Positions 20,936 to 64,000 are shown, numbered from the stretch's first letter. The stretch is DNA of 64,000 nucleotides from Malacoraja senta (GCA_038087875.1 JAXLNO010003629.1:62001-126000); one strand, 5' to 3'. Program-made: numbers and translations. Notes: generated by a model from the letters alone, not told the origin.

Positions 20936-21216
20936 ACCTTATAAACCTACGCTGCATTCCCTCAATAGCAAGAATGTCCTTCCTCAAATTAGGGGACCAA
21001 AACTGCACACAATACTCCAGGTGTGGTCTCACTAGGGCTCTGTACAACTGCAGAAGGATCTCTTGCTCCTATATTGAACTCCTCTTGTTATAAAGGCCAA
21101 CATGCCATTTGCTTTCTTCACTGCCTGCTGTACCTATATGCTTACTTTCATAGACTGAAGAACAAGGACCCCCAGATCCCGTTGTACTTCCCCTTTTCCC
21201 AACTTGACGCCATTTA

Positions 21217-33719: not shown

Positions 33720-33807
33720 ATGAGGCCCTGGTTTTTCTGCAGCAGTTTGCCAGCTGGTTTGATGTTCAGTGTCTTTGTTTTCCTGCTTCGACCTGTTTCC
33801 ACACAGA
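33720..33807 (+). CDS. Leader (signal peptide) exon MRPWFFCSSLPAGLMFSVFVFLLRPVSTQ
   Basis: Acceptor ttttttcccacag| at 33707, 12-nt UTR, ATG with A at -3, hydrophobic core LMFSVFVFLL, consensus phase-1 donor A|GTAAGT at 33808; joins in frame to the exon at 38174. Confidence 0.7.
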
Positions 33808-36800: not shown

Positions 36801-39800
36801 TGCCAGGACCACTGTCAGTCATGATTTATACAATTAATTTAAATGTAGATGGGTTGGTTAGTACATTTGCAGATGAGAACAAGATTGCTGCACTGTGAAC
36901 AACGCTGTCAAAGTATCAAAGTATGTTGTAAAGTAATGAATGGGATATAGACCAGCTACAGAAATGGGTGGACAAATGACAGATCAAGTTTAATCCAAGC
37001 ATCTGTAAGGTGTTGCACTTTGGGAGGTTGAAAATAAGGGGAAGATATACAATTAATGGCAAGGCCCTTAACAGCATTGATGTACAGAGGGACCTTGGGA
37101 TCCAAGTCCCAAACTCTCTGAAAATGGTAATACAGGTAGATAGAGTGACAAAGAAGGCAGATGGCATGCCTTTGGTTGGATCATTGGGTATAAGAGTCAG
37201 GAAGTCAGGATGTGATGCAGCTTTGTAGGACTTTGGTTGGGCCGGATTTCAAGCATTACATGCAGTTCTGGATGCCCCAAAACGATGCAGAGGCTTTGGA
37301 GACAGGGCGGAGAAGGTTTACAAGAATTATGCATGTGTTACTGGATATTAGCTACAAGGAGAGGTTGAATAGACTTGGATTGTTTTCTCTGGAATGTTTG
37401 ACATTGAAGTAAGGCTTGATAGAATTCTACCAAATTATGAGCGGCAAGGTCAATGTAGACAGTCAGAATCTTTTCCCCAGGATGGAAATATCAAATACAA
37501 GAGGGCATGGGGGGCTTTTAGGTGAGAGAGGCAAAGTGTGAAGGAGATGTGAAGGACAAGTATTTTACAGTGGTGAGTGGCTGGAACATGCTGCTGGTGG
37601 TGATGGAGGGAGATGTGTCAATGGGATTTAAGAGACTTTTGGATAGATATGGATAGAAACGGAGAGATATGGATTATGTGTAGGCAGATAAGAGTTGGTC
37701 GTGGCATTATGCTCGACATGGACCTTGTGGGCCGAGGGGCTTGTTCCTGTTCTGAACTGTTCTATGTTGTAAATCACTGTGGAATGAGGAGCAGGCAGGG
37801 AGGCAGGAGCATGTTTATTCTGTTCCAGGTCTGTCCGACAAGGGCCGGGGATGCGGTGTGTACAGGATCGGCCTGATCTTCACCCACATCAGGAAACCCC
37901 ATCACAGGGAACACCGGCTGGAGACCCGACACAAACGCCCTTCCACCTCCGTCTTTCTCCCACTCACTCTTCTCATGTCATGAAGTATCCCTGGATCAGG
38001 CCAGGTTATTCCAGCCAGCCATCTATTCACAAACTGTGTCCGTCTCACTGGAGGTTCTGTGGGAGATCAAAACATTCTGGAAATAAATGAAATTCAAAAT
38101 TAATAATTACAGACATGGAGTGGAGGAAATGTGCTTAAAATGTTAATTCCTACATTTTTCCTATTTCCAACAGAAATCAGAAATCAGATTTATTTCTTGG
38201 ATAATGGAGGCGACATTGTGTTAAAAGGACCGGACAATCCTGGGAGTTACACTGTTGTCTGGGAATGGGAACCACACTCAGGGCCGGGAAAACACGCTGT
38301 GGTAACTCTCCGCGCCGAGAACAAGGGCTTGTGGAGCAGACAGTGGGGCAATGGCTGGGGAAACATAGACAAGAACAAGGAGGTGGATGTGGATCTCCGT
38401 ACTGGTAATATGGCAATAAAAAAAAACACATTTAAATGGTCAGGATTGTTCACTTTGACCGAAACACATCCGAGGAACCAGATCCTGAAACGATATGAAA
38501 TATATGGGATCAAAGGTGAGTGGGCGAGACACGGATCAACAATATGTTTCTATGTAAATAATGTCACGTGTAATGATGAAATATGGCGGGAATTGTGAGA
38601 CTTCTTCCACCAGATGAATCTCCCAATGAAACAATTGGGGGAAAGATTTGTCTTCATTGATTCTGTGGGCCTGGGGTGAGATTGTCGAGTGACACTGCTG
38701 CTCAATGTTACCCAGTGAACCAGGTCCATGCCTCACTTGGTTGAGATCCCAGAGGAAGTCCTTCATCTGTGGAACTTACACTGGTGGGAGAGTTCCCACC
38801 TTGAGGGCGGTTGGGGGAGACATGACAGGGACAAATGGACAAACGTATCAATCCAGTTACATCTAAATGTTGTTTGCATTCACTGGTCAGAGTGTTGCCG
38901 GTTGCACCAGCAGTGTCACGGTGAACAGCCGGCATTGACCTGTGTGAATATAAACAGCTTCAGGACTTCCACCCATGCGTTTCACAACGAGGAATTCCAC
39001 AACTTGCTGACAGTTCTTGCGGTGAATCTGCCAGCGCTCCCCTTCACTTCTCCACGTGGAGACCAGGACTGGAGCAGGAATATGCTGATATTCCCCGACA
39101 CTGGCACTGGGAAAACTGCTCCCGGATCCGGTGCCTGCAGGGGTGGAGACTCTTCAGGAATCAAAACTAATTGTTATTGTAGAATTAGACTCTTTCATGA
39201 TAAAAAAATGAAATATTCAATATTAATAAATGTGTTTACTTCTAGAAGTTGGTGCCACTCAGAACCATTCCAACATTCCTGGGATGGCAGGACTTTCATA
39301 TGAAGAAAAACTGGATAGACTCGGCTTGTACACGCTAGAATTTAGAAGATTGAGGGGGGATCTTATAGAAACTTACAAAATTCTTAAGGGGTTGGACAGG
39401 CTAGATGCAGGAAGATTATTCCCGATGTTGGGGAAGTGCAGAACCATGGGTCACAGTTTAAGGATAAGAGGGAAGTCTTTTAGGACCGAGATGAGAAAAT
39501 CATTTTTTACACAGAGAGTGGTGAATCTGTGGAATTCTCTGCCACAGAAGGTAGTTGAGGCCAGTTCATTGGCTATATTTAAGAGGGAGTTAGATGTTGC
39601 CCTTGTGGCTAAAGGGATCAGGGGGTATGGAGAGAAGGCAGGGATGGGATACTGAGTTGGATGATCAGCCATGATCATATCGAATGGCGGTGCAGGCTCG
39701 AAGGGCCGAATGGCCTACTCCTGCACCTATTTTCTATGTTTCTATGTTTCTAACAGCTTGGGAGCTTTAGCAGAGGATGAACAAGGCCTTTGCCTCCTGT

Positions 39801-42800
39801 AGATAATTCTCCACAGGTGTAAAGGGATTGGGATTTGTTCATTGCTCTAACGTTTGCCGAGATACAGTGAATGAGGTTGGATCCAACTACTTTGATCGTC
39901 ATGTTTTCCCCAGCGAAATCTCCTTTGCAGAATATTCTAGGCTGCAGGAGTACGTGCTGAGGGACACACTGAAGATCAGTGCAGACAAAGCAAAGGCATT
40001 GTGGAATAGAACAACAGTCCATGGACCATCTGCCACCAGTCCCCGCCGAGCTAAATCTAATGTACAAACCTCTGAAACACTTGAATTGGTATAATCTCAG
40101 GATGCAGCGTGAGTGTCAAGAGTGTTATGTACACAAAATGTGTGAACACTGTCAAAGTGAGGAACAATCACACTATGTCTGTGTAGTCTGTACAATATCA
40201 AATTCAGATTTAGATTCATATTAGTTCATTGTCATATACATTTGGGTAAAACACATTCATTGTTCAGATAAAGTAAATTATAATAAAAGGTACATTAAAA
40301 AATGCAACAAAAGCAAAACAGCAGAATGGTGCAGAGATTGCAGTGCAGTCTGAAGTAATGCAACATAAAACTAACGTTTATGAAAATGCCCCAGGGGATG
40401 ATGAGTGTTTGTGGCTCTGGGCTTGGACTAGCTGGAGTTTAGAAGAATGAGGGGCGTGTCTAGGTTTTCACTTGAGGTGAGATTGAGCCCAGTCATTGGA
40501 CTTGTACAAACCACTACTCACTCTGAATCTCATTGATCTCTTTTTCACAGTTGAGGCAAGTGCACAGAAGCCTCTGTTGGGCAGTGACGTCACACTCAGC
40601 TGCACCATCTCCAGACTCTCAGATACAGTCAGTCTTCACTGGAGACCCATGGACTCATCCCAGCAGAACAGGAGCAACACTGATCAGATCCGCCTGGATA
40701 ACACGGTCTATCTGATGGTTCAACACGTTACATTGGAGGATGGGAAGCTGTATGTGTGTGATGTGCAGGAAAACGGAAACATTGTTCACACAAGTAACGG
40801 AGATTTTACTGTAGACAACAGTGAGTGTAAACACCTCCCATTGGATATCAAGTAGACACTTGTATCACGGTGCTTCTTGTAATATTATATAATCATATAA
40901 CCATATAACAATTACAGCACGGAAACAGGCCATCTCGACCCTTCTAGTCCGTGCCGAACACGTATTCACCCCTAGTCCCATATACCTGCGCTCAGACCAT
41001 AACCCTCCATTCCTTTCCCGTCCATATAACTATCCAATTTATTTTTAAATTATAAAAACCAGCCTTCCTCCACCACCTTCACTGGAAGCTCATTCCACAC
41101 AGCCACCACTCTCTGAGTAAAGAAGTTCCCCCTCATGTTACCCCTAAACTTCTGTCCCTTAATTCTCAAGTCATGTCCCCTTGTTTGAATCTTCCCTACT
41201 CTCAGTGGGAAAAGCTTATCCACGTCAACTCTGTCTATCCCCCTCATCATTTTAAAGACCTCTATCAAGTCCCCCCTTAACCTTCTGCGCTCCAAAGAAT
41301 AAAGCCCTAACTTGATCTAATTAAGCCCTAATTATGTGTGTGCCCCGTGAAGAACTGTGACAGTGACCAACTGCTCTCCAGTATAAAATGCTGCAATGAT
41401 CAGGGAGAAGTTTACAGAAAGTCTCTCTGTGGAGCAGATGCCTGCTTGTCTCTGTGTGACAGACACACAGCAAAGGAGGGGGATGTCTTTCTGTAACCAT
41501 TCTTCAGTCAAGTATTTTGTCAGTTTATCTTGCCATCAATGCTCCAGTATCTGAGACTGAGATACTGATCTCAAAGTGTCAGATAGAAAGTGTAGTCACC
41601 ATGACAACCACCCGCATTTGCTGCTCACACTCACACTGGGGGTCCCGGCCCACACATCAGCACTGAACAACAATCCATCCCCTCTCCCCTCACTGACCCT
41701 TCTCTCCGAGTCTGGTGTTGCTTGAAGTGATTCCACCTGCTGCAGACTCGGGATTCGGATCTGCATTCAGCTGGGAGCAGGACCCGGGAACAGGGAAGGA
41801 CAGGGAATCAATGGGTGTGAATGGGAGAGGGATGGTGGGAATAATGGGAATGAAGGGACGGGAAGACCCGACCCACTTGAAGTGCCAACCTGTCCGGGTC
41901 AGTCCCCACGCAGGCATCCTCTGGGCTGCTTCTGTACGCAGCCTGAACCTGCACCACCTCCTGCAGACAGACTGACAGAGACATTCACCTCCCAGACCGC
42001 TCTCAGGAGTCTCCGGGAGGTTTCATTCCATCCCGGGAGATTCCCGGACAATCCGGGTGTGGGGGCGAACCTAATGTTGAAATGTAGAGTGGAATATCCA
42101 AACTTCACTGCAATTTACTGCCGTACAGGACATTGTATTTTATAAAGATCTGATGAGTTTAGTGCGGCATTCATGAAAGATGTTACATTTGAAACTTGAT
42201 CAGCTGAACAAAACACCACGAATGTTTATAAGAAGAAGGTTGAGAATCTCTGTATGGCACGGTAACTGTAATACTGAAAGGAGTTATCCTCTGTCTCTCT
42301 GATACAGATTTATATAAAGGGAGATACAGACTTTACCGCTCCAGCACAGATCACAGTGAACTTCACCTGGTTTGTTCTGGGAGTTATGGTCGTAGCTATT
42401 CCCGTGCTGAGTGGTTCTGGACACCTCTTCACCTTCAACAGCAGAAAGTAATAGCATCTGCAGACCGTTCTCAGCCCATCAATGTCAAAGGGACCGACTT
42501 CGGGAATCGACTGGTGACCTCAGGGAAACCCTTCGATGGCAAGGATTTCAGTGTGAGGATTGTCCCCGTTTTGTTTCAAGATGCCGGAGTTTACACATGT
42601 TTTCTGGAACCAAATCGATTTCGCACCATTTATCTAGTCACAGTGAAAGGTAGGAGACAGAATGTTGCCACTGAGTTTACTGATGAACTTATTGTTTAAA
42701 ATGTAAACAACCTGCTTGTTTCCACAGTCACAGCTGAACCGTCTGATGCAGTGACTGAGGGAGACAACGTTACCCTGACCTGCTCTGTGTCTCACGTCAT

Positions 42801-45800
42801 TGAGTCAATGAGACTGGTTTGGATCAATGGCGATGGCAAAAGTGTTGGAGAAAAGACACTGACCGGGAAAGAGAAATCACTGAGTCTGGTTATTCAGAAA
42901 GCTGAGAGAGGCAGAGGGAACTGCAGATGTGGTTTGTTTCATCAAGGCCTGCCCCGGCTTTTTGTCCCGTACTATCAGGAGCCCCGTGGTAAGTGATAAG
43001 GGTTTGTTCTTCATATTTAGAGTTATGATTGAGTTTTGATGTCGCTTATTGATGCTGAAATTTGAATGGAATATTTTCTTCCAGTTTGAGTGGTCTAACT
43101 CTGTTATGATCAATGAATTCTCAAATTTCAAATAACACTTCCCGAACCCCACTTCTCCCCCCTTCATTGTGCACGCATTTATCCCACCACCCAGTTATCC
43201 TATTCTCTTCCCTTCCTCTTTCAACTCATCTCCCACCCCTTCCTTGAGTTTTCCTTTTATGTTCTTGCTCCACTTCCACCCATATCCCTCCCTCTGTTAC
43301 TGATCTGACTGTAGATCAGTCAGTATTAGTTGACCTGATCTACGTCATGTTTTACTGCATGCCGCTGTGTACTCAAACAGTCATCATATTATCTAGTCTG
43401 TTAGTCCAGCCTCTAGTTAGATTCGTTGCTGAGCTTGAGCTTACAGAACCTAAGTATTTGAGCTCTGTGTGTTTACTATAACAAACAACTTCTTCTTATG
43501 TATGGATCCTGTTATTACACGTGTTTATACTGACAACCTTTTGTCTCCATTTCACCCCTCCATTTTGTCATTATCTCCATCCATCTACTCATCACCATTC
43601 CCCACCTGTATCCACCTATCACTCACCATGCTTTGTCTCATGCCTACTTCCCTTCCCCAGTTGTCACTCTCCCATTCCATCAGCCTGAGAATGCATCCTG
43701 ACATGAAACGTCATCAATCCATTCCTTCCACAGATGCTGCCTGACCCATTGAGTTTCTCCAACACTTTGCGTTTGATCAACATTCCACAATCTGCAGTTT
43801 CTTGTGTCTCCATGGAGACCCACTGGTCAACGTGGGCAGATTGCTGCAGAGGGCCTGTTTCCATGCTGTTCCATGATGATGAATTATAACGTACAACTTA
43901 GTAAAGATTAATTCTCTGCAATATTGCTAATGACAAGGTCAGTGAAAAATTATTGTCCAACATTTACTCATTTGTTCTCTTTTCCTACAGGAAGTGGACA
44001 TTATATGTACTTTTTGCATCAGGAAGGCAACTTTGTATTGAAAGGACCTGGAAATGGCCCCATTGACTTGGAATGGAGGCCACACTCAGGGCAACAAACC
44101 ACAAAGCGATTGGCCACTTTCCACAGAGAAGATCAGCAGTGGGACGTACAATGGAGTGATGAGTACAATCAAATACCAGGCATCTCCCAGAGGATGCATG
44201 CGGACTGGGGTACCCTTAATCTGAGGATCAGGATGCCCACATTCAAACTTGCAGGACTGTTCACCTGGAATCAGACACAGCCCGCTGGGAAAATCCTGAG
44301 ACAGTGGGAACTATTTGGGATTAAAAGTAATAGAGTCATAATGTCACACAGCACTGAAACAGGCCCTTTGGCCCAATTCATCCATACTGACCAACTACCC
44401 ATCTAAACATCCCATTTGCCCTCATTTGGCCCTTATCCCTTTAACCTTTTTTCCCATCTACCTGTTTAAATGCCCTTTAAATACTGTACCTACATCAAAC
44501 ACTTCCTCTGCTCGATCTTTCCATAAAGTATGTTCATGTACCACACTCTTTGTCAAAAAACTGCCCCTAATATTAAGGGGTATATCAAATCTGCCCCTCT
44601 CACCTTAAACATGTACTACCTAGTTTTTGATTCCCCAACCCTGGAAAAAAAGACCATGTGCGTTTACTATAGATATGCCTCTCATGATTTTATTCACTCC
44701 CATATAATCTCTGTTAAAGACATCCAAGAAATATAATCAGTCTGAAGAAGGGTCTCAACCTGAAACGTCACCTATCTATGTTATCTAGAGTTCAAAGGTC
44801 TTTTATTGTCACGTGTACCAATTAAGTGATATTCATATTACCAGACATGCTGAATTACTCCTGCACTTTATGTCCTTTTAAATATTTACCAGCACCTGCA
44901 GTTCTGTGTTTCTACTATACTAAAACATCCCTACCTGGAAGTGTTGATGTGGGAGACGAGGGGGCGAGGGGGACAGGTGGTCACTACCAGGAAGTGTTGA
45001 TGTGGGAGACGAGGGGGCGAGGGGGGAAAAGGTGGTCACTACCAGGAAGTGTTGATGTGGGAGACGAGGGGGCGAGGGGGACAGGTGGTCACTACCAGGA
45101 AGTGTTGATGACATCACTGAGCACGGCAGCTCAACATTCAGCCAACTGTCTGCCTGCAGGAAAAAGACAATTCTGCCCACAGTAGTTCAGAAAGCTGTTG
45201 GTGAACTGAACCACATGTGTCTGTTTCCACAGTTGAGGCAGACTCACCGAGGCCAGTGATGGGCAGTGACATCACCCTCAGCTGTACCATCTCCAGACTC
45301 CCAGATACCATCAGTCTTCACTGGAAACCAAGAGGCTCGTCTCAGCAGAACTGGAGGAACAACACTGATAAGATCCGTCTGAATAACGCCGTCTATCTGA
45401 TGATCCAACACATTGGAGCAGGAAATCCCAATCTATACACATGGGAAGTGCAGGAAAATACCTCCATTGTTCTCACTGGAGACACCAATGTTGAAGTGGA
45501 TCAGGGTGAGTCCAAAGCTGCCTTGCAGCAGGTATTAAATAGTTCTTGATATCAAACTGTTCCACATGTTGTATAGTGAGCACTGACTCCACCCGTGGGC
45601 TTCCACACTGCAGGATGTGGACATTGCCTTTACCCTGGGACATGGTGTAAATATAAAATGGTGGCACTAAGATTGATGGAGCCACACAGGAGAACCAAGG
45701 GATTTATTTCAGTTCATCTGCATGAATCAAAGAGAATAATATCCAGTGATGGAAATAACATCTAGTTTTCAGTGTATAACAGAACAGGAAAATATGACCT

Positions 45801-48800
45801 AATTCAAGTATAAATGCAGAGGAAATATCAGAATCAGAATCAGAATCACATTTTATTGGCCACGTAATCATACACAAGGAATTTGACAGTGCTTTGCTCG
45901 CATGTGGTAAAAACACGATATACAGCAGACAATTAAAAATAAAACATTATAATTTAAACAAGTGAAAATAAAGTACCGGAGTAAAAAGAGGCTACCGACT
46001 TTTGGCTGTTGAGTAGAGCTACGGCTCGTGGGAAGAAGTTGTTTTTATGTCTGGCTGTGGCAGCTTTGATAGTCCGGACTCACCTGCCAGAGGGAAGTGA
46101 TTCAAAGAGTTTGTGGCCAGGGTGAGAGAGGTCAGAGATGATCTTGCCCGCTCGCTTCCTGGCGCTTGCAGTGTATAGTTCATCAATGGAGGGAAGGTTG
46201 CAGCCAATAACCTTCTCTGCTGATCGGACGATTCGCTGCAGACTCCAGGTGTCGTGCTTGGTGGCTGAGCCAAACCAGACCATGATGGAGAAGGTGAGGA
46301 CAGACTCTATGATGGCCGTGTAGAATTGGACCATCATTGCCTGTGGCAGGTTGTGTTTCCTCAGCTGCCGCAGGAAGTACATCCTCTGTTGGGACTTTTT
46401 GATTGTGGAGTCGATGGTGGCCTCCCAGTTGAGGCGCTGGAGATGATACATAGATACATAGATACATAGAAAATAGGTGCAGGGGTAGGCCATTCGGCCC
46501 TTCGAGCCTGCACCGCCATTCAATATGATCATGGCTGATCATCCAACTCAGTATCCCGTACCTGCCTTTTCTCCATACCCCCTGATCCCTTTAGCCACAA
46601 GGGCCACATCTAACTCCCTCTTAAATATAGCCAATGAACTGGCCTCAACTACCCTCTGTGGCAGAGTGTTCCAGAGATTCACCACTCTCTGTATGAAAAT
46701 GTTTTTCCTCATCTCGGTCTTAAAGTATTTCCCCCTTATCCTTAAGCTGTGACCCCTTGCCCTGAACTTCCCCAACATCGGGAACAATCTTCCTGCATCT
46801 AGCCTGTCCAACCCCATAAGAATTTTGTACGTTTCTATAAGATTCCCTCTCAATCTCCTAAATTCTAGCGAGTATAAGCCAAGTCTATCCAGTCTTTCTT
46901 CATATGAAAGTTCTGACATCCCAGGAATCAGTCTGGTGAACCTTCTCTGCACTCCCTGTATGGCTATAATGTCTTTCCTCAGATTTGGAGACCAAAACTG
47001 TACGCAATACTCCAGGTGTGGTCTCACCAAGACCCTGTACAACTGCAGTAGAACCTCCCTGCTCCCATACTCAAATCCTCTTGGTATGAAGGCCAACATA
47101 CCATTCGCTTTCTTCACTGCCTGCTGCACCTGCATGCCTACTTTCAATGACTGGTGTACCATCACACCCAGGTCTCGCTGCATCTCCCCATTTCCTAATC
47201 GGCCACCATTTAGATAATAGTCTGCCTTCCCGTTTTTGCCACCAAGGTGGATAACCTCACATTTATCCACATTATACTGCATCTGCCAAACATTTGCCCA
47301 CTCACCCAGCCTATCCAAGTCACCCTGCAGTCTCCTAGCATCCTCCTCACAGCTAACACTGCCCCCCAGCTTAGTGTCATCCTCAAACTTGGAGATGTTA
47401 CTTTCAATTCCCTCGTCTATTTCATTAATATAAATTGTAAATAGCTGGGGTCCCAGCACTGAGCCTTGCGGTACACCACTAGTCACTGCCTGCCATTGTG
47501 AAAAGGACCCGTTTACTCCTACTCTTTTCTTCCTGTTTGCCAGCCAGTTCTCTATCCACATCAATACTGAACCCCCAATAACGTGTGATTTAAGTTTGTA
47601 TCCTAATCTCTTATGTGGTACCTTGTCGAAAGCCTTCTGAAAGTCCAGATACAACACATCCACTGGTTCTCCCCTATCCACTCTACTAGTTACATCCTCG
47701 AAAAATTCTATAAGATTCGTCAGACACGATTTACCTTTCGTAAATCCATGCTGACTTTGTCCAATGATGATGCCGAAGAAATTAAATGACTCCACAGTTG
47801 TGAGTGTGGTGTTGTTGAAGATGAGTGGGGCGAGGGGAGGGGGAGCTCTACAATCAGGAGGGGAGGATTGAGTCTACAATCAATTCCACTGTCTTATGAG
47901 CACTGAGCTTCAGGTTGTTGCGATGTGAACAGCACACCAGCTTTATGATTAGGGTGCCTTGGACATCGTGCTGAAGTAAGCATGCAGGTACAGCAGGCAA
48001 TGGAGAAAGCAAATGGCATGTTGGCCTTCATAGCGAGATGATTTGAGTATAGGAGCAAAGAGATCCTACTGCAGTTGTACGGGGCCCTGGTGAGACCACA
48101 CCTGGAGTATTGTTTGCAGTTTTGGTCCCCTAGTTTGAGAAAGGACATTCTTGCTATCGAGGGAGTGCAGCATAGGTTCACCAGGTTAATTCCTGGAATG
48201 GCGGACTGACATATGATGAACGAATGGATCGACTGGATTTATCACTGAAATTTAGGATGAGAGGGGATCTTATAGAAACGTATAAAATTATTAAGGGATT
48301 GGGCAGGCTAGATGCAGGAAAAATGTTCCCCATGTTGGGCGAGTCCAGAACCAGGGGGTCCCAGCTGACATCCCAGAGCCATGGGTTTGTCCCTGTGGAA
48401 ACTCACAACATTATATCTCGGCGTGTGTGGAAATCTAATTCTTTGTTCCCTGTCCCTCTCTTGCAGGTTTACATAACAAGACGTACACAGTTTATCGCTC
48501 AGTCACAGATCACAGTGAACTCGACCTGATTTGTGAAGCTTCTCCTGAGCTCAGTGAAACGAAATGGACTTGGAAATCACCACGTTTCCAGAATCAAGAG
48601 ATGGAAATCGCTTCTTCTCACAGGTCTGAGCCGATACATGTCGACAGGAGCTACTTTGGGAATCGACTGGAAACCACAGAGGGAAATGTGAATGGCAAGA
48701 ATTTCCGTGTGAGGATTGTCCGCGTGCAGTTTGCAGATGCTGGAGTTTACACATGTTCCACGGGATCAAATATATATGTGAACATTGACCTAATCACAGT

Positions 48801-51800
48801 TATAGGTAGGAGACTGGATGTTACTACTTTTAAGAATTAAGTTACTGGTAATCTGAGTACAGACTGTAATGTCAGCAGAAATTCCCAAGTTTGAAGAATT
48901 ATTTTACCTCCAGAGCTTATTTGTATTTTGCTGAACCCAAAATCTGCCCTAAACCAACATTATTGGGAAGCACATCAAATGTTATTTTCATTTATTTTGC
49001 TGAAAACACATTGTTTTATACATAAGGGAGGGAATATGATGAAGGTTGATTCACATAGGTGCAAATGAGCTTCTATCGGAAATATTAAAAAAATCATTCA
49101 ACTTCTCTCAACACATTCCCCAAGTTTCTTTGACCTCAAACGACCCATCCTAATTTTTGAAGGCTCACTGGAGGCTTTAAACTGAGTGTATTTTGTGGAA
49201 TTTATCGATTAATATTTACCTGGATGAGTGTTGTGGCCAAAACTGTGGCCAGAGACAATGATGTGGGCATTGGTTGCTCTTTGTATAATTAGTTCAAAAC
49301 TGTTGTGAATGATTATGGAAAAGACACTTGGGGAGGTACATGGATTGGAAAGTTGCAGAGGGATATGGGCCAAATGTGGGAACATATTTTAGATGGAGCA
49401 TCTTGGGCGGCATGGATGAGTTGGGCTGAATGGACCGAATTGTTTCATGCTGTATGACTATGCCTCTAACTCTTGTTGTGTAATATAATTTTCCACACTT
49501 AGAACACCAGATACTGGTGTCAAAGTACTGAGAAAAACACAATCCAGACAAAATTCATTGTTTTACGATTTTCTTCTTTCCACAGTCACAACTGAACCAT
49601 CTGGCGCTGTGACTGAGGGAAGAAAGATTACCCTGACCTGCTCTGTGTCTCATGTCACTGAGTCAATGAGACTGGTTTGGATCAATGGTGAAGGCAAAGT
49701 TGTAGAGGAGAAAAATCTCATGCAAACAAAGCAGGAGGACAATTCTTTGCAGCTGATTATTGCAATAGCTGATGGAGTAAGAAGGAAATGGACATGTGGT
49801 TTGTTTCATCAAAGTACAGCCAAGGTTTTCATTCCATATAATCTGCAGGTGAACAGTAAGTTTCTTAGCTTCTGCTCTTCATTATCTCGCCACAGAGTTC
49901 TTGTCACGTTGCTATTCTTTTTGGATAACTTTTAACATTCCATGTCTTACTGCAAGTAGAGCTCAATCATAGACATTTCCTTCAAACCTCTTGTCCATGC
50001 CTATAAGGTCATTTCTATTGTAAGTAGTCCAGGTCTCTGAAGCATATGGGAGCACATGGATCACTACTGCTGGCAGACCACTGACCAAGACCTGTGATGG
50101 CCATCTCATTGAAGGTGATCGGAAATTTCATCAACAATGTCTGTCCTTGTTGATAAGTGTCTCCAGAGGTATGAAAACCAGTCCACTAGTATGAAAGCCA
50201 GTGTGTCACTGTGAACCTTTTTGTCAGAAGTCAGTATAGTAAGGTGGGCAGCTTGGTGGAAGATCTTTGCCATAACACCCAAACTGTGCCACTTAAAGAT
50301 CACAAAAGTAGTGAAAATCATCTTGAAAATAGTTGTACGTTTCTTTCCCCTGTTCTGATGCTGTAAAACATTACAGCGGTTGAAGCATCCACAGTAACTT
50401 CACCAAAGGCTGCCATGTGAGAACAGAAGATGTGGGGGAGGGAATACTGATGTCTTCACCTTGTCTGACCATGATGGCTCAGTGGTAGGGTTGCAGCCTT
50501 ACAGCGCCAGGGACCCGGGTTCAATGCTGACTACAGGTGCTGTCTGTATGGAGTTTGTACCTTCATCCCGTGCCCTGTGTGGGTTTTCTCCAGGATTTCC
50601 GGTTTTCTCCCAAATTCCAAAGATGTACAAGTCTGTAGGTTAATAGGCTTAGTTTAATTGTATGTTGTCCCTGGTGTGTGTAGGATAGTGTTAGTCTGTG
50701 GGAATCGCTGGTTGGTGTGGACTCGGCGAGCCCAAGGGCCTGTTTCCGCGCTGTATCTCTAAACTAAACTAAACACGCCCTTTCCTCCCAATCCCACCCA
50801 TCCATTAATCCCTGCCCTTCATGTGGTCCGAAGCCTCGGTGAAAGACATTTTGTACAATGCTGACATAAGGCAAAGCACTGACCCCTAACAGAGGAAGAT
50901 CCTGTAAACACCCAGTCACAAAGAAACAATCTCCACCACACATAGATCAATGAAGAGTCAGTGAAGCACAAAGTGGAAAGTATCAATGTCCCAACAGGAA
51001 CACTTTAATTCCTCACAGATAATCACATCATCCAATCATAGAATTGTGGAATGGTTGTAGCAGAGAAGGTGGCCATTTGACCCATGCTAACTCTCATCCA
51101 GAGCAACTCGCTAATTCTACCCCCTCTCCTTTTGCCATCACATTGCAGCTTTTTCATCACTATATATTTGTCCAATTCTCTCTGGAAAGCCATGATAGAA
51201 CCCAGCTCTCCAACTGATGCAGACAGTACACTTCAGACTCCAACTACCTGCTGCCTAAAAAGATTTTCCACAAGTCATTCTAACATGTTTCCCCTTTATT
51301 TTAAACCTATAACTTTTTGTGCTCAGCCTTTCCACTGAAGGGAGCATCCTTCCACAATCCATTCTGTTCAGACTGAATATATGAGGCATAAATGAACAAT
51401 GATGCCATTGATGTGATGAAAGAGCATTATTGACTCTTGTCTTCAAACTCTCTCTTCAGTGTGCCATGGTAATAACTGGACAGAGAACAGCCATAAAAAG
51501 TATCTCAATTAAACCAACCATGTTTACTGTTTAGTTTAGGTTAGAGATACAGCGCGGAAACAGGCCCTTCGGCCCACCAGGTCCACGCCAACCAGCGATC
51601 CCCGCATATTAACACTATCCTACACCCACTAGGGACAATTTTTACATTTACCAAGCCAATTAACCTACAAAGCTGTACGTCTTTGGAGTGTGGAAGGAAA
51701 CCGAGGATCTCGGAGAAAATCCATGCAGGTCCCGGGGAGAAAGTACAAACTCCGTACAGACAGCACACATAGTCGGGATCGAGCCCGTGTCTCCGGTGCT

Positions 51801-54388
51801 GCATTCACTGTAAGGCGGCAACTCTACCGCTGCGCCACCATGCCGCGTTCATTGTGTCATCTCTTTGTGACATGTTTACAGTTTGACTTGCTGATTCAAC
51901 TGCTTCAATGCACCATCTGATGTGATTATTTGACTGAACACAGCAACCTGCTCCCTGATGGTCACTGTGTGCTATAGGTTGGTGTTAATAATCCTTACTC
52001 CTGGCGAGCAGCAGTCTCCCCCCTGGGAGGGGACAACATGGTTCTGACTACAGTCGGCTGAGAGTCCACTTAGAAATGAAGACTTTGGTTGTCCTCTGCC
52101 TGTGCCTCAGTGCCAGTAAAACCCTGCTCCGTCAGCCGCTGCACCAAGGGAGAGGCCACCCCCACCCACACCCACTCCCACTGCGGTGTCCCCACCTCCC
52201 AGATTGGAAATCTGTGCTCCTGGCTGAGCAGAAGCCTCCCCATGTACGCTCATCTAGCACAGTCTCGCTATGCAGCAGAACTGAAGTTGAACTTTATTTT
52301 ACAAGGGTAGCGCACACCAGCCTCTCCATCCTTTGGCCTCATTGCAGACTGATGCTTTTGGGTGGTGAGCTGTCCTTAAAGGGCAGGAGATATCAATCAG
52401 TGAGTGAATAGATTAGTTGGTGTGTGGAATTAATGCATGGATCAACCATCTCCAATTTTACACTAAAAACACATGAAGATGTGTTCATTAGGATTGAAAT
52501 AATAATGTGTTCAACCTCATTGACATCAGTAGGCAATGGTTACATGCACAGTACAGTTTTAGTACTTGAAGACCAAAATTAATTTTAGGAGTTGAAAATC
52601 GGAATGAAAAATAATAATAATAATAATCAGGACAGATAGGAACTGTGAAAGAGGAACAACTGTGAAAGAGGAACAAAACCAAGGAACTGATTGTGGACTT
52701 TGGAATGGGTAGGATGGGGACCCACAGTCCCGTTTATATCAACGGGTCGAAGGTGGAAATGGTCAAGAGCTTCAAATTCCTGGGCGTGCACATCTCTGAA
52801 GTTCTCTCCTGGTCTGAGAACACGGATTCTATTATAAAGGAAGCACATCAGCGCCTCTACTTCCTGAGAAGATTACGGAGAGTCGGTATGTCAAGGAGGA
52901 CTCTCTCTAACTTCTACAGGTGCACAGTAGAGAGCATGCTGACTGGTTGCATCATGGCTTGGTTCGGCAACTTGAGTGCCCAGGAGTGAAAAAGACTACA
53001 AAAAGTTGTGACCACTGCCCAGTCCATCATCGGCTCTGACCTCCCTACCATCAAGGGGATCTATCGCAGTCGATGCCTCAAAAAGGCTGGCAGCATCATC
53101 AAGGACCCACACCATCCTGACTACACACTCATCTCCCCGCTACCTTCAGGTAGAAGGTACAGGAGCCTGAAGTCTGCAACGACCAGGTTCAGGAATAGCT
53201 ACTTCCCCACAGCCATCAGGCTATGAAACTCAACTGAAACAAAACTCTGAACATTAATAGTCCATTATCAGTTTATTTGCACTTTATCTGTTTTATTTAT
53301 TCATGTGTGTATATATTTATACAATGGTATATGGACACACTGATCTGTTCTGTATTCATGCCTACTATATTCTGTTGTGCTGAAGCAAAGCAAGAAATTG
53401 ATTGTCCTAACTGGGACACATGACAATAAACTATCTTGAATCTTGAGTCCAGCCATGATCGCATTAAATGGCGTTGCTGGTTCGAGGGGCCGAATGGCCT
53501 ACTCCTGCATCTATTGTCAATTGTCAAAGATCCTTTCTTTGAATCTGACAACGTTTTTTTCATCATAAAACATGAACTCACTTCTTTCCCTTTCCACGGA
53601 TACTGCTTAAACGGCTGAGTATTTCTAACGTTTGCAGTTCTTGTGCGCCTGGTTAGAGAGGATTGAAGCTGGAGGGCAATATCCACTCTGTTATCAGCAG
53701 TGCTCATTCAACCATTGTTCCAGGCTTAGACTATGATAGACATTTGTCCACAGTACAGTGGGAAGTATCACAGCTGAATCAGCTACTTTATCAACCAGCC
53801 ATCAGCTTCCATCTCCTGCCTGAGAAATGTCAGCTGATTGTAACCAAGAAATAGAAACTTGTGTGAATGTTTACAGTCTCTAACTGATGGTTACTGAGGC
53901 AAGTTGTGGCTCTCTAATCTTTCTGAGTAAGGTCAATTAATCTGGAAAAAAAAGACACAATGTGCTGGAGTAACTCAACGGGTCAGGCGGAATCTCTGGA
54001 GAACATAGATTGGTGAGGTTTTGGGTCTTGACCCTACTTCAGACTAAAGGGCTGCGACCTGAAATGTCACCTGCCTAACCTGCTGAGTTTCTCCAACACT
54101 TTGTGTCTTTTATTGGTAAACTCTCATCTGCAGTATCTTGTGTCTCAGTGAAACTGGATCACAAGTTAAACTCAAGACTTCTGCTCTAAATTAGTCAGTG
54201 TGGTTAATGCCTGGTCTTTGGGGGAGCTTTTGAATGGTGTCCATTTATTCTACAAATGTGAACTGTGTTTATTATTTTGACAGGGAATTATACTTTCCTC
54301 AGATTTGTTGTAATAATCGGAGGTCTGGCTGTTCTCATCGTCATTATACTGGCAGTGGAGTTCTGTCAAAGAAAGCGCAAGCCTACAG
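33720..54388 (+). CDS. Spliced gene for a type I membrane receptor with 8 Ig domains, (V*-C2-V-C2)x2 + TM; CD4/LAG-3/G6F-like-related IgSF member; 3' end incomplete
   Basis: join(33720-33807,38174-38515,40551-40820,42308-42649,42728-42988,43991-44326,45233-45505,48467-48805,49586-49855,54284-54388). Every intron is GT-AG and phase 1, the junction codons (K,V,N,V,G,I,G,V,R) are sense, and there are no internal stops; 2626 nt. Family assignment is inferred from architecture and the WxC motif. Confidence 0.85.
33850..34440 (+). mobile_element. Ancient L2 RT relic
   Basis: Translation QLDLASTSLD...DIQDCMS...QLN...KAIVFSP follows the L2 post-YADD pattern. Confidence 0.55.
34800..37760 (+). mobile_element. 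Ancient, heavily degraded near-full-length CR1 in the leader-D1 intron
   Basis: Collinear remnants of ORF1 (WLRTWCRGQ), APE (FNARSI), RT (FADE) and 3' end. Confidence 0.75.
38174..38515 (+). CDS. Ig exon D1: cysteine-less V-like domain (IRNQIYFLDNGGDIVLKGP...VVWEW...SGLFTLTE...YGIK)
   Basis: ttccaacag| acceptor, AAG|GTGAGT donor, 342 nt open; Trp in C strand, GLFT at the F-strand GxYxC position; paralogous to D5. Confidence 0.8.
38600..40060 (+). mobile_element. L1/Tx1-like ORF2 3' relic interrupted by CR1
   Basis: WSRNMLIF and YVLRDTLKISADKAKALW resemble the Tx1-type ORF2 C-terminus. Confidence 0.5.
39275..39750 (+). mobile_element. Young CR1 family A 3' fragment
   Basis: ORF 39230-39655 ending GYGEKAGMGY; (TTCTATGT)n tail. 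Confidence 0.9.
40551..40820 (+). CDS. Ig exon D2: C2-type domain (GSDVTLSC...LHW...LYVC)
   Basis: tttttcacag| acceptor, A|GTGAGT donor, 270 nt open, canonical C-W-C. Confidence 0.9.
40895..41290 (-). mobile_element. CR1 family B 3' fragment
   Basis: ORF 41050-41295; CATATAAC tail. Confidence 0.88.
42308..42649 (+). CDS. Ig exon D3: V-type domain (LHLVC...AEWFW...FGNRL...DFSVRI...DAGVYTC)
   Basis: ctctctgatacag| acceptor, AAG|GTAGGA donor, 342 nt open; DAGVYTC V-set motif. Confidence 0.9.
42728..42988 (+). CDS. Ig exon D4: C2-type domain (VTEGDNVTLTC...LVW...GNCRCGLFHQ)
   Basis: 78-bp intron after D3; tttccacag| acceptor, G|GTAAGT donor, 261 nt open. Confidence 0.9.
43991..44326 (+). CDS. 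Ig exon D5: cysteine-less V-like domain (HYMYFLHQEGNFVLKGP...LEW...AGLFTW...FGIK)
   Basis: tttcctacag| acceptor, 336 nt open, weaker donor AAA|GTAATA; about 35% aa identity to D1 by hand alignment. Confidence 0.75.
44931..45110. repeat. G-rich minisatellite, 53-55 bp unit x3.4
   Basis: Units start at 44931, 44984, 45039 and 45092 (CTACCAGGAAGTGTTGATGTGGGAGACGAGGGGGCGAGGGGGACAGGTGGTCA). Confidence 0.95.
45233..45505 (+). CDS. Ig exon D6: C2-type domain lacking the F-strand Cys (GSDITLSC...LHW...LYTW)
   Basis: tttccacag| acceptor, G|GTGAGT donor, 273 nt open; about 57% identity to D2. Confidence 0.88.
45826..47930 (-). mobile_element. Rex1/Babar-type 3' fragment split by a CR1 insertion
   Basis: (TCAGAA)n tail; KKSQQRMYFLRQLRKHNLPQ matches the element at 29575; it continues at 47770-47930. 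Confidence 0.8.
46448..47768 (-). mobile_element. Young CR1 family A element, 5'-truncated, open RT-to-end ORF
   Basis: ORF 46548-47795 (415 aa) ending GYGEKAGTGY. Confidence 0.93.
47970..48365 (+). mobile_element. CR1 ORF2 C-terminal fragment ending about 100 bp upstream of the D7 acceptor
   Basis: LEYCLQFWSP-type sequence. Confidence 0.8.
48467..48805 (+). CDS. Ig exon D7: V-type domain (LDLIC...KWTW...FGNRL...DAGVYTC)
   Basis: ccctctcttgcag| acceptor, AG|GTAGGA donor, 339 nt open; about 47% identity to D3. Confidence 0.9.
49586..49855 (+). CDS. Ig exon D8: C2-type domain with WxC motif (ITLTC...LVW...KWTCGLFHQ)
   Basis: tctttccacag| acceptor, A|GTAAGT donor, 270 nt open; about 56% identity to D4. 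Confidence 0.9.
50471..50774 (+). mobile_element. HE1-type V-SINE
   Basis: tRNA-like A/B boxes, GGGTTTTCTCC core, CR1-like 3' end, (AAACT)n tail. Confidence 0.85.
51528..51847 (-). mobile_element. HE1-type V-SINE
   Basis: Reverse-complement copy of the same family, with a (TTTAG)n tail on the plus strand. Confidence 0.85.
52640..53445 (+). mobile_element. Rex1/Babar-type 3' fragment
   Basis: KTKELIVDF...FKFLGVHIS...AHQRLYFLRRL; GACAATAAA...TTGAATCTTG tail. Confidence 0.85.
53948..54150. mobile_element. Short hairpin-forming repeat, probably Penelope-derived (related relics at about 43670-43812 and 44735-44915)
   Basis: AAAGACACAATGTGCTGGAGTAACTCA...TGAGTTTCTCCAACACTTTGTGTCTTT inverted pair; GAAACGTCACC-type motif shared among copies. 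The superfamily is inferred. Confidence 0.45.
54284..54388 (+). CDS. Transmembrane exon RNYTFLRFVVIIGGLAVLIVIILAVEFCQRKRKPT
   Basis: attttgacag| acceptor, AG|GTAAAG donor, phase 1, a hydrophobic run of about 20 aa followed by Cys and a basic stop-transfer cluster. Confidence 0.8.
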
Positions 54389-61183: not shown

Positions 61184-61701
61184 ATGGGTCAATTGCAGGC
61201 ACATGGGACTAGCTTGGATGGGGCAAATTGGATGGTATAGACTAGTTGAGCCAAAGGACATGGTTCTGTGCTGTATGACTCTATGACTCTTTGACTTTAT
61301 AAAAAGGTGAAAAAAATTTAAATTGTGCCCTCTCTCTAAACAGGTTTGGGCAATCAAACACAGACAGCTCCACCATCAAAAAGAAACACAGAAGGTGAAT
61401 CTCAACTTTAAGGCAACCTTGAAGAAATTCAGCAGATGGCAGGTGTAGTGGCCATTTGGCCTGTTTTACTTGTCACTGATGATGGCATGTGCCTTTAAAT
61501 TTTAGACTGCCCGTTGTATTGTGGGTGGGATTTATGACGTGTTTTGGGGCGTGTTTGGAGCTTAGTTGCTTGCGCAGAAGTCTAGTTTTTAGATTAGTTT
61601 GGAGAGACGACGGAGAAGGTCAAACCTTCGACCATGTCAATGTTACGGAGACGAGGAGTTTTGTAATGTTTAAAGTTGCAAGTTGGAATTGAAGGAAGAT
61701 T

Positions 61702-63941: not shown

Positions 63942-64000
63942 GGAATTGAAGGAAGATTGCAGTAACGAGTCGGAAGAAACTTGGATGTATCTTGCTGTTT

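What the first reader, a model, noticed from the sequence alone, without database searches (positions are those of the whole stretch)
33720..54388. Eight-Ig-domain CD4/LAG-3-like receptor built by tandem duplication of a four-exon V-C2-V-C2 cassette
Seen: ten open, phase-1 exons give leader + D1-D8 + TM. D1/D5, D2/D6, D3/D7 and D4/D8 are pairwise paralogs, and even the intron edges match (gtaggagac after D3 and D7; tccacag|tcaca before D4 and D8; cacag|ttgaggca before D2 and D6). So a genomic block of four exons was duplicated. Established: CD4 and LAG-3 have a V-C2-V-C2 ectodomain with a WxC signature in C2 domains, and some teleost CD4-1 D1 domains lack the Cys pair; teleost G6F-like is a related 4-domain receptor. 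Inference: this is a doubled (8-domain) member of that group in a cartilaginous fish, roughly twice the length of CD4, which would change the geometry of any MHC-II or other ligand contact. Counter-evidence: CD4 and LAG-3 D1 is normally split by an intron and here it is not, and no Lck or FxxL tail was found, so strict orthology is unproven.
Basis: partly seen in the sequence, partly recalled or inferred. Interest (0 to 1): 0.9.

Follow-up and report, generated by a model that had tools for sequence, protein, structure and literature searches.

The report
Eight-Ig-domain skate immune receptor gene
This is a real gene for a membrane receptor with eight antibody-like domains, one member of a large unnamed family of paired inhibitory and activating receptors in sharks, rays and primitive bony fish whose four-domain unit folds like CD4/LAG-3; it is not CD4 or LAG-3, and this copy has a stop codon early in its signalling tail.

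Summary
D1/D5, D2/D6, D3/D7 and D4/D8 are paralogous (35-58% aa).

I add an eleventh exon, tail exon T1 (61344-61442). It carries an in-frame TAA exactly where skate orthologues have the Tyr of a YxN motif.

The gene belongs to a family of more than 140 predicted proteins, nearly all labelled only "uncharacterized". Members occur in all elasmobranch orders sampled, chimaera, sturgeon, paddlefish, bichir, bowfin and eel. They carry either a YxN plus two-ITIM tail or a Lys-bearing TM, so this is a paired-receptor family.

The same eight-domain layout exists in Mobula, Leucoraja, Rhinoraja and Amblyraja.

An AlphaFold model of the Mobula D1-D4 cassette matches CD4 best, then LAG-3. Rat CD4 D3-D4 superposes at 2.6 Å. 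However, the D1 and D2 sequences, the tails, CD4-specific Pfam models and multigene status do not fit CD4/LAG-3 membership.

The two cassettes are ancient lineages, each shared with four-domain genes, and not a recent in-gene doubling.

First readers of this scan flagged about ten similar eight-Ig loci elsewhere in this genome; I did not check those notes.

The parts
33720..33807 (+). Exon 1: start codon and signal peptide (29 aa plus 1 nt, ends in phase 1)
   Evidence: ATG with A at -3 and donor GTAAGT. 72-79% identical leader exons lie in Leucoraja loci L003 and L005.
38174..38515 (+). Exon 2: D1, a V-type Ig domain without the Cys pair
   Evidence: Phase 1-1, 342 nt. No Pfam hit. AlphaFold pLDDT 88 with a V-set fold; best matches are 2B4, NTB-A and NITR11. 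It defines the family in the 1.8-billion-protein profile search.
40551..40820 (+). Exon 3: D2, a C2/C1-like Ig domain with a Cys pair and YxC in strand F
   Evidence: Pfam ig and C1-set matches. 87-88% identical to the Leucoraja counterparts.
42308..42649 (+). Exon 4: D3, a V-set Ig domain with a Cys pair
   Evidence: Strong acceptor found at 42307|42308. Pfam V-set E 2e-5.
42728..42988 (+). Exon 5: D4, a C2 Ig domain; the family's WxC is CxC here (W replaced by C)
   Evidence: The W is over 90% conserved in the family.
43991..44326 (+). Exon 6: D5, paralogue of D1 (35% aa), no Cys pair
   Evidence: 82% identical to Leucoraja L003 D5.
45233..45505 (+). Exon 7: D6, paralogue of D2 (58%); the F-strand Cys is replaced by Trp (YTW)
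   Evidence: The same Cys-to-Trp change is present in Mobula and Leucoraja orthologues.
48467..48805 (+). Exon 8: D7, paralogue of D3 (48%), V-set
   Evidence: Pfam V-set 29.2 bits, above the 26-bit gathering score..
49586..49855 (+). Exon 9: D8, paralogue of D4 (58%), with an intact WTC motif
54284..54388 (+). Exon 10: stalk, uncharged transmembrane helix of the inhibitory type, and basic stop-transfer residues; followed by a GT donor
   Evidence: 83-93% identical to the TM exon of Leucoraja P0084. No Lys-type TM exon exists in the window.
61344..61442 (+). Exon 11: first cytoplasmic exon T1 (99 nt, phase 1-1), with an in-frame TAA at 61409-61411 replacing the Tyr of the YxN motif
   Evidence: tblastn of skate orthologue tails gives E 3e-11 and 72% identity. 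AG acceptor and GTGTAG donor. Orthologues read LYGN or LYAN at this site.

Best explanation
The locus is one gene for a type I membrane protein with eight Ig-like ectodomains, arranged as two V-C2-V-C2 cassettes. It belongs to a large, unnamed immunoglobulin-superfamily multigene family of cartilaginous fishes and early-branching ray-finned fishes. Judging by its closest relatives, the host is a skate. Family members pair similar ectodomains with one of two signalling ends. One end is an uncharged TM plus a long tail with YxN and two ITIM-like motifs (IHYGSI and VIYAQI). The other is a TM with a central Lys and a short tail. This is the classic layout of paired inhibitory and activating innate immune receptors. 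This gene has the inhibitory-type TM. By inference, its intact orthologues bind an unknown ligand through the fast-evolving V domains, then recruit SHP-type phosphatases and Grb2 through the tail. The four-domain cassette has the CD4/LAG-3 architecture: rigid V-C2 rods with one continuous strand running from strand G of the V domain into strand A of the C2 domain, and WxC in the fourth domain. This probably reflects distant common ancestry, not membership. In this copy a TAA replaces the YxN tyrosine codon in the first tail exon. The full-length mRNA would therefore give a receptor with a 30-residue signal-less tail or be degraded. Skipping this 99-nt phase 1-1 exon would stay in frame. The ectodomain shows no extra decay, so the lesion is recent, allelic, or tolerated. 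Shown here: the exon model, the paralogy, the family, the paired tails and TMs, orthologous eight-domain loci, the fold match and the stop codon. Inferred: splicing in this species, ligand binding, inhibitory signalling and the fate of the truncated form.
For: Exon model and phases. Cassette paralogy.

Family: a D1/D5 profile finds 37 cluster representatives among 1.84 billion proteins, all elasmobranch, chimaera or basal actinopterygian, plus weak cyprinid hits. A cassette profile finds 103 more family proteins, nearly all 'uncharacterized'.

Paired design: 41 proteins have ITIM tails and 32 have a Lys in the TM. Leucoraja P0103, of the Lys-TM type, is 75% identical to the window's D1-D4, and its D4 ends in the same way before the TM exon.

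Eight-domain orthologues:
- Mobula P0004 is 57% identical over residues 1-875.
- Leucoraja locus L003 has the same order L, D1-D8, TM, T1.
- Rhinoraja P0070 and Amblyraja P0061 gene models span the D4-D5 junction.

Fold: the AlphaFold model has pLDDT 88.7 with continuous strands at residues 105-120 and 310-325. The top 13 Swiss-Prot matches are all CD4, followed by LAG-3. VIA-align gives CD4 Z 18 and rat CD4 D3D4 rmsd 2.6 Å over 170 of 177 residues. The family profile hits LAG-3 in the PDB at E 1e-12 with WxC aligned.

Stop codon.

Ectodomain not decayed: 5-8 departures from 63 conserved columns, the same as in the Leucoraja and Mobula eight-domain genes. dN/dS is 0.4-0.8 in most exons.
Against: No transcript data for this species were available, so the D4-D5 join and the use of T1 rest on splice-site logic and on gene models in other species.

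The Leucoraja RefSeq model starts at D5.

Tail exons T2-T4, which carry the ITIMs in orthologues, lie beyond the window, so their state is unknown.

The stop codon may mean this copy is a pseudogene.

Sequence-level evidence for CD4/LAG-3 kinship is weak. LAG-3 scores no better per stretch than CEA. The D1-D2 profile finds only generic Ig hits. D1 has no significant PDB sequence match.

The inhibitory function is read from motifs only.
Confidence: 0.72

Rival explanations
1. It is a true CD4 or LAG-3 family member, a doubled co-receptor for MHC class II.
For: CD4 and LAG-3 are the best structural matches over the whole four-domain cassette. WxC is present in the D4-type domain. D1 is unsplit as in shark CD4 and LAG-3.
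Against: The tails have YxN and ITIMs, with no Cx(C/H) or (F/Y)xxL(D/E). D2-type domains have YxC. No CD4-specific Pfam model matches. This is a multigene family with Lys-TM partners. Elasmobranch CD4 and LAG-3 are separate, named four-domain genes (PMC10768021). Relatives in bowfin and sturgeon have none of the markers that the finding lists for the CD4/LAG-3 locus (GPR162, GNB3, COPS7A, MLF2) within 10 kb.
Confidence: 0.05
2. These are two adjacent genes, or a gene plus a dead half: D1-D4 and D5-D8 are not joined in mRNA.
For: The Leucoraja RefSeq model starts at an internal Met in D5. Four-domain genes with a nearly identical first cassette exist (L005). The cassettes belong to different old lineages.
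Against: There is no TM, stop-containing terminal exon or leader-like exon between D4 and D5, which are only 1002 bp apart. The D4 donor and D5 acceptor are both good and both in phase 1. Mobula, Amblyraja and Rhinoraja gene models join the two halves. The Leucoraja locus has the leader and D1-D4 directly upstream of its D5.
Confidence: 0.1
3. This copy is a young pseudogene in a birth-and-death multigene family and makes no functional protein.
For: An in-frame TAA lies in T1, 31 nt before the exon's end, with further exons downstream in orthologues, so nonsense-mediated decay is expected. The conserved Trp of WxC is lost in D4, and a Val-to-Glu change sits at the cytoplasmic end of the TM. 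A LINE lies just after T1. Unverified notes report many paralogues in this genome.
Against: All ten upstream exons are open with intact splice sites. Departures from conserved columns are no more numerous than in the orthologues. The codons after the TAA are still conserved, 8 of 11. T1 can be skipped in frame. A conserved Tyr-less short-tail class exists in the family (P0080, P0083, P0088).
Confidence: 0.35
4. The family is the cartilaginous-fish branch of an already named family: CEACAM, G6F-like, MDIR or DICP.
For: CEA is the top PDB sequence hit for the profile. The N-terminal V domain lacks Cys, and the layout with an ITIM and a C-terminal ITIM/ITSM-like motif recalls CEACAM1. One isoform is auto-named CEACAM5-like. 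A skate EST was once called a CEA homologue (PMC4079198). G6F-like has four Ig domains, YxN and reported CD4/LAG-3 similarity (PMC3528668). MDIRs are modular skate receptors with ITIM or charged-TM forms (from my own knowledge; PMC3031540).
Against: D3 and D7 are V-set domains with a Cys pair, unlike CEACAM A and B domains. The D1 profile hits no CEACAM N domain. No CEACAM appears in the top 30 structural matches. No ITAM occurs in any tail. No protein named MDIR, DICP or G6F appeared among the 154 proteins retrieved. MDIR V domains are described as CD300/pIgR-like.
Confidence: 0.15

Closest known systems
CD4 / LAG-3 family
   Same: The ectodomain unit is V-C2-V-C2 with one phase-1 exon per domain. 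Each V-C2 pair forms a rigid rod in which one continuous strand runs from strand G of the V domain into strand A of the C2 domain. WxC lies in strand F of the fourth domain. CD4 and LAG-3 are the best structural matches.
   Different: The signalling ends differ: YxN plus ITIMs, or a Lys in the TM. D2-type domains have ordinary YxC. D1 has no detectable sequence similarity to CD4 or LAG-3. The family is multigene. Cassettes are multiplied to 8 domains, and to 16 or more than 20 in the catshark and eel gene models. No CD4-specific Pfam model matches.
Paired inhibitory/activating IgSF receptor families (CEACAM1/3, SIRP, Siglec/CD33-related, LILR/KIR, teleost NITR/LITR)
   Same: Near-identical ectodomains are coupled either to ITIM-bearing tails or to a TM with a basic residue. 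Genes are clustered and numerous, and the membrane-distal V domains evolve fast.
   Different: The domain types and their order differ. No sequence-level membership in any of these families was found. The ligand and the adaptor are unknown.
Ly9 (SLAMF3)
   Same: Ly9 has a doubled V-C2 unit, and its N-terminal V domain lacks the disulfide. D1 of the window is structurally closest to the SLAM/CD2-family V domains of 2B4 and NTB-A.
   Different: Ly9 ranks only 29th for the whole cassette. SLAM tails carry ITSMs (from my own knowledge). Here D3 and D7 are canonical V-set domains.
Teleost G6F-like (G6fL)
   Same: It has four Ig-like domains, a TM and a YxN motif (PMC3528668).
   Different: G6fL has an ITAM; no tail in this family does. 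A direct sequence comparison could not be made with the tools.

Membership tests
CD4/LAG-3 family | Four extracellular Ig-like domains in the order V-C2-V-C2, one exon per domain (D1 unsplit in sharks) | tested here: met
   Exon model, Pfam domain types, model secondary structure. The unit is present twice in this gene. Shark D1 exon structure comes from PMC10768021.
CD4/LAG-3 family | A continuous beta-strand links strand G of each V domain to strand A of the following C2 domain, giving rigid rods | tested here: met
   The AlphaFold model of the Mobula orthologue's D1-D4 has strands at 105-120 and 310-325. Rat CD4 D3D4 superposes at 2.6 Å over 170 of 177 residues. This is a predicted model of an orthologue, not of the window's own protein.
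CD4/LAG-3 family | WxC motif in strand F of D4 | tested here: met
   Trp and Cys are over 90% conserved in the family's fourth domain. The window's D8 has WTC; the window's D4 has CRC, with the Trp lost. The motif aligns to WxC of LAG-3 D2 and D4.
CD4/LAG-3 family | WxC motif in strand F of D2 as well | tested here: not met
   D2-type domains have YxC throughout the family. The window's D2 has YVC and its D6 has YTW.
CD4/LAG-3 family | Cytoplasmic Cx(C/H) motif (CD4) or (F/Y)xxL(D/E) motif (LAG-3) | tested here: not met
   The window's TM and T1 exons, and the full tails of the orthologues, have neither motif. They carry YxN, IHYGSI and VIYAQI instead.
CD4/LAG-3 family | Location in the conserved LAG-3-CD4 genomic neighbourhood | tested here: inconclusive
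   The window's flanks hold only LINE fragments. Bowfin and sturgeon relatives sit next to CSRNP and CCDC81-like genes, or next to an M1 aminopeptidase and a PA/M28/TFR-like gene, within 10 kb. That range is too short to decide.
CD4/LAG-3 family | Sequence recognition by family-specific profiles, or top database matches named CD4 or LAG-3 | tested here: not met
   The listed families are generic Ig models and a few weak unrelated matches; Pfam's CD4-specific models (PF05790 C2-set and PF09191 CD4-extracel, accessions given from memory) are not among them, and one search prints only the first 25 of 35 families. None of the 154 retrieved proteins is named CD4 or LAG-3. The LAG-3 PDB hit is no stronger per stretch than the CEA hit.
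Paired inhibitory/activating IgSF receptors (functional class) | Related ectodomains combined with either ITIM tails or a TM carrying a basic residue | tested here: met
   41 ITIM-tail and 32 Lys-TM proteins. Lys-TM protein P0103 is 75% identical to the window's D1-D4.
Paired inhibitory/activating IgSF receptors (functional class) | This copy itself carries functional ITIMs | not testable with these tools
   Exons T2-T4 lie beyond base 64000: in Leucoraja and Rhinoraja, T2 is 1.9-5.4 kb after T1. T1 has an in-frame TAA.
CEACAM family | A Cys-less N-terminal V domain related in sequence to CEACAM N domains, followed only by C2 (A/B) domains | tested here: not met
   D1 lacks Cys, but its profile finds no CEACAM N domain. 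D3 and D7 are V-set domains with a Cys pair. No CEACAM is in the top 30 fold matches.
G6F-like | Four Ig domains plus a tail with YxN and an ITAM split over two exons | tested here: not met
   There is no YxxL/I-x6-8-YxxL/I in any tail examined. Ectodomain homology was not tested because no G6fL sequence was obtainable.
MDIR (skate modular domain immune-type receptors) | Sequence identity with Raja eglanteria MDIR1-5 domains (CD300/pIgR-like) | not testable with these tools
   No MDIR sequence could be fetched. No retrieved protein carries that name, although many come from skates. The description is taken from PMC3031540 and from memory.

The most novel reading that the evidence does not exclude
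This gene represents an undescribed, ancient sister family of CD4/LAG-3. It is a clustered set of paired inhibitory and activating innate receptors in cartilaginous and basal ray-finned fishes. It keeps the CD4-type V-C2-V-C2 rod and treats it as a module, stringing two copies together here, and four or more in the catshark and eel gene models. If so, the T-cell co-receptor fold would derive from, or share a root with, an innate paired-receptor system. The eight-domain forms would reach roughly twice as far from the membrane as CD4.
Probability: 0.35. Interest if true: 0.75.

Novelty: new variant of a known kind. Interest (0 to 1): 0.58.

Why it matters
CD4 and LAG-3 have stood as an isolated pair with an unusual rod-like architecture and no clear relatives. 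This work points to a large family with the same fold but innate-style paired signalling, present from chimaeras to sturgeons. That gives a concrete candidate for where the co-receptor ectodomain came from. It also adds an unstudied receptor system to the immune gene set of sharks and rays. The phase 1-1 cassette design shows how receptor length can change in steps of four domains. For genome annotation, several RefSeq models of this family appear to be cut or fused. Examples are the Leucoraja model that starts at D5 and the catshark 1710-aa model with a LINE-like N-terminus.

Tried and rejected
1. Neighbouring genes for synteny. The window outside 33.7-61.5 kb holds only LINE/RT fragments.

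2. Tail exons T2-T4. They are not in the window.

3. A Lys-type alternative TM exon. None is present.

4. Named relatives by word-indexed searches with sturgeon P0026 and with two family profiles. These returned only 'uncharacterized' family members plus weak CD22-like cyprinid hits. The link to G6F-like stayed untested.

5. ESM Atlas feature search. It returned generic Ig clusters only.

6. D1-only and D1-D2 profiles against the PDB. There was no specific relative.

7. Fold search of the window's own D1. It is a generic V-set domain, slightly closest to SLAM/CD2-family and NITR V domains.

8. Literature search for a description of the family. None was found in the open-access library.

9. Recent in-gene tandem duplication. 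I rejected this because the cassettes are not sister groups and the introns no longer align.

10. I first counted T1 as 100 nt, which would make skipping shift the frame, and noted the stop at 61407-61409. A recount gives 99 nt and a stop at 61409-61411. The earlier notebook entry is wrong on both points.

Full report
**Observation.** I rebuilt the gene model from the raw sequence.
- Ten exons on the + strand all have AG acceptors and GT donors. All internal exons are multiples of 3 nt in phase 1-1.
- Their coordinates are L 33720-33807, D1 38174-38515, D2 40551-40820, D3 42308-42649, D4 42728-42988, D5 43991-44326, D6 45233-45505, D7 48467-48805, D8 49586-49855 and TM 54284-54388.
- tblastn of each exon against the window shows four paralogous pairs: D1/D5 35%, D2/D6 58%, D3/D7 48% and D4/D8 58%. 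E-values run from 5e-17 to 3e-32. There are no further copies in the 64 kb.
- Beyond 10-20 bases at the exon edges the introns no longer align.
- Synonymous divergence between the cassettes is 0.57-0.96, so the split is old.
- Pfam recognises D2, D3, D4, D6, D7 and D8 as generic Ig or V-set domains, and gives nothing for D1 or D5.

**A missed exon and a stop codon.** The TM exon ends in a donor site, so I searched downstream with the tails of homologues.
- One exon, T1 (61344-61442, 99 nt, phase 1-1, AG/GT), matches the first cytoplasmic exon of skate orthologues at 72% identity, E 3e-11.
- It has an in-frame TAA at 61409-61411. Leucoraja and Rhinoraja read Tyr at this position, in LYGN and LYAN.
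- The 11 codons after the stop are still 8/11 conserved.
- The later tail exons are not in the window. In the orthologues T2 lies 1.9-5.4 kb after T1. Here a 604-aa LINE reverse-transcriptase ORF fills 61693-63504.
- As written, the mRNA would encode a 30-residue tail without any tyrosine motif, or it would be a target of nonsense-mediated decay (inference).
- Because T1 is 99 nt and phase 1-1, skipping it stays in frame.

**The family.**
- A profile of D1 plus D5, scored against 1.84 billion cluster representatives, found 37 proteins.
- A profile of the whole cassette found 103 more family proteins in the word-indexed collection.
- They come from every elasmobranch order sampled, from Callorhinchus, and from sturgeon, paddlefish, bichir, bowfin and eel. 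Nearly all are named 'uncharacterized protein'.
- The closest relatives of the window are skate proteins from Leucoraja, Rhinoraja and Amblyraja, at 76-88% identity in most exons and dS of about 0.15-0.18. The host is therefore a skate, but not one of these three species, or else these are paralogues.
- Among 146 family proteins, 41 have an uncharged TM and a long tail with YxN, IHYGSI and VIYAQI-type ITIMs. Another 32 have a TM of the type GYLLVKL with a central Lys and a short tail.
- A small conserved class has an uncharged TM and a short Tyr-less tail (P0080, P0083, P0088).
- Leucoraja P0103 is of the Lys-TM type. It is 75% identical to the window's D1-D4, and its D4 ends with the same residues just before the TM exon.
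- This is the signature of a paired inhibitory and activating receptor family. The window's gene is of the inhibitory type by its TM and by T1.

**Is the eight-domain form real?**
- Mobula birostris XP_072120630 (P0004, 974 aa) aligns to all 875 residues at 57% and continues into an ITIM tail.
- The Leucoraja locus L003 has the same order of leader, D1-D8, TM and T1. Its RefSeq model nevertheless begins at D5.
- The Rhinoraja model P0070 (cut by a contig end) and the Amblyraja model P0061 both span the D4-D5 junction.
- The D6 Cys-to-Trp change is shared by the window, Leucoraja and Mobula.
- In the window there is no leader-like, TM-like or terminal exon in the 1002 bp between D4 and D5.
- I therefore accept one eight-domain gene. 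Transcript proof for this species is lacking.

**How the two cassettes arose.**
- I built a maximum-likelihood tree of 40 cassettes. The window's C2 falls with the C2 of Leucoraja and Mobula. That clade also holds the cassette of a sawshark four-domain protein and the cassette of Amblyraja P0089. It is sister, with weaker support (SH-aLRT 92), to a group made of the catshark cassettes and a catshark four-domain protein.
- C1 falls in a different, well-supported clade together with many batoid four-domain genes.
- Forcing all cassettes of the eight-domain genes into one clade is rejected: the log-likelihood drops by 124 and AU p is 3.6e-6. One caveat is that I defined the group after seeing the tree.
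- The two halves are therefore old cassette lineages. Either an ancient internal duplication was followed by repeated cassette loss, or neighbouring paralogues fused. The data do not choose between these.
- Cassette multiplication recurs in the family. The catshark model P0001 has four D1-type domains and about 15 Ig domains: three full cassettes preceded by one that lacks its D1 behind a LINE-like N-terminus. The eel model P0015 has three full and three partial cassettes. Both models may be partly fused.
- Between loci, the V exons diverge far more than the C2 exons: D1 48-73% and D3 60-65%, against about 87-88% for D2 and D4. dN/dS is near 1 for D1 and D3. This fits diversifying selection or exon exchange at the ligand-binding domains.

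**Relation to CD4/LAG-3.**
- AlphaFold2 on the Mobula D1-D4 with a 62-sequence alignment gave a confident model, pLDDT 88.7 and pTM 0.85. Long continuous strands run from each V domain into the next C2 domain, at residues 105-120 and 310-325. Takizawa et al. (PMC10768021) describe this rare feature for CD4 and LAG-3.
- Foldseek against reviewed UniProt models returns CD4 at ranks 1-13 and 15 (IgSF3 at 14), then LAG-3 from rank 16, aligned over the whole cassette.
- Against the PDB, LAG-3 and CD4 are the best natural hits. TM-scores for CD4 (0.35-0.43) and LAG-3 (0.29-0.35) are well above the roughly 0.2 of other multi-domain Ig proteins.
- VIA-align gives CD4 Z 18.1. Rat CD4 D3-D4 superposes at 2.6 Å over 170 of 177 residues.
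- The family profile hits LAG-3 chains in the PDB at E 1e-12 with the WxC motifs aligned.
- Against membership, per matched stretch LAG-3 scores no better than CEA.
- The D1-D2 profile finds only generic Ig domains.
- D1 has no significant sequence match. On its own it looks like a generic disulfide-less V domain, nearest to 2B4, NTB-A and NITR.
- D2-type domains carry YxC, not WxC.
- No CD4-specific Pfam model matches.
- The tails lack Cx(C/H) and (F/Y)xxL(D/E).
- Elasmobranchs have their own named, four-domain CD4 and LAG-3 genes.
- In bowfin and sturgeon the relatives are flanked, within 10 kb, by genes that are none of the markers the finding lists for the CD4/LAG-3 locus. This is weak evidence.
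- My reading is that it works with a CD4/LAG-3-type scaffold and may be distantly related, but it is not a member of that family.

**State of this copy.**
- The ectodomain exons depart from 63 highly conserved family columns 5-8 times per cassette. The Leucoraja and Mobula eight-domain genes show the same number.
- dN/dS against the orthologues is 0.4-0.8 for most exons.
- Apart from the TAA, the notable private changes are Trp-to-Cys in the WxC of D4 and Val-to-Glu near the inner end of the TM.
- The gene is either a recently disabled copy, a tail-less (decoy-like) variant, or an allele or assembly error. I put about one third on outright pseudogene.

**Other candidates and earlier notes.** CEACAM, G6F-like, MDIR and DICP were considered. 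The tested features do not fit: no CEACAM N-domain similarity, V-set third domains, and no ITAM. I could not obtain G6fL, MDIR or DICP sequences for a direct comparison. First-stage notes of this scan list about ten other eight-Ig 'CD4/LAG-3-like' loci on other pieces of this genome. One is described as lying in a multigene cluster and several as having inhibitory tails. These notes are unchecked but fit the multigene picture seen in other skates.

**Verdict.** The finding is a new variant of a known kind: a paired-receptor family built on a CD4/LAG-3-like scaffold. It is of moderate to good interest for comparative immunology. That interest is tempered because the proteins already sit in databases as uncharacterised predictions, and because this particular copy has a premature stop.

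Noticed in passing
window 11383-21064: A large palindrome made mostly of LINE/RT-like sequence. The arms are about 11383-15526 and 17442-21064, 94-97% complementary in five collinear blocks, with a spacer of about 1.9 kb. It could be a real inverted duplication or an assembly artefact.
   Followed up: partly
window 61693-63504 (+), 46548-47795 (-), 6136-7515 (-), 22140-23453 (+): Long LINE reverse-transcriptase ORFs. One open 604-aa ORF sits about 250 bp after tail exon T1, and one 415-aa ORF lies inside the D6-D7 intron. The first 33 kb of the window is almost entirely such fragments.
   Followed up: no
window 54358-54360: Glu replaces the Val found in the Leucoraja and Rhinoraja orthologues near the cytoplasmic end of the TM helix (ILAVEFC against ILAVVFC and ILAAVLC). 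This change is private to this copy.
   Followed up: no
window 42989-42996: Reading through the D4 donor meets a stop after two codons (…EPRGK*). Intron retention would therefore give a secreted four-domain form. Rhinoraja P0085 is a 438-aa model that ends right after D4.
   Followed up: no
L003:5188-9248 (Leucoraja erinacea CM054017): The RefSeq model LOC129701493 starts at an internal Met in D5. However, a leader exon and D1-D4 exons lie 0.7-4.8 kb upstream in the same orientation. The gene is probably under-annotated, and is eight-domain as here.
   Followed up: yes
L003, L005 compared with window D1-D4: Between loci the V exons are far more divergent (D1 48-73%, D3 60-65%) than the C2 exons (D2 and D4 about 87-88%). 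dS is also raised in D1. This suggests exon exchange or diversifying selection at the V domains.
   Followed up: partly
proteins P0001 (Scyliorhinus canicula, 1710 aa) and P0015 (Anguilla rostrata, 2139 aa): Both gene models hold several tandem cassettes: three full cassettes and one lacking its D1 in P0001, and three full and three partial cassettes in P0015. The two internal catshark cassettes (the second and third D1-type units) are each other's closest relatives, which indicates recent, independent multiplication. The P0001 N-terminus looks LINE-derived, so the model may be partly artefactual.
   Followed up: partly
family proteins P0016, P0022, P0047, P0049: Some isoforms or genes lack single domains (D3 in P0016, D2 in P0022) or lack the TM (sturgeon X2 isoforms P0047 and P0049). 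This is what in-frame skipping of phase 1-1 exons would produce.
   Followed up: no
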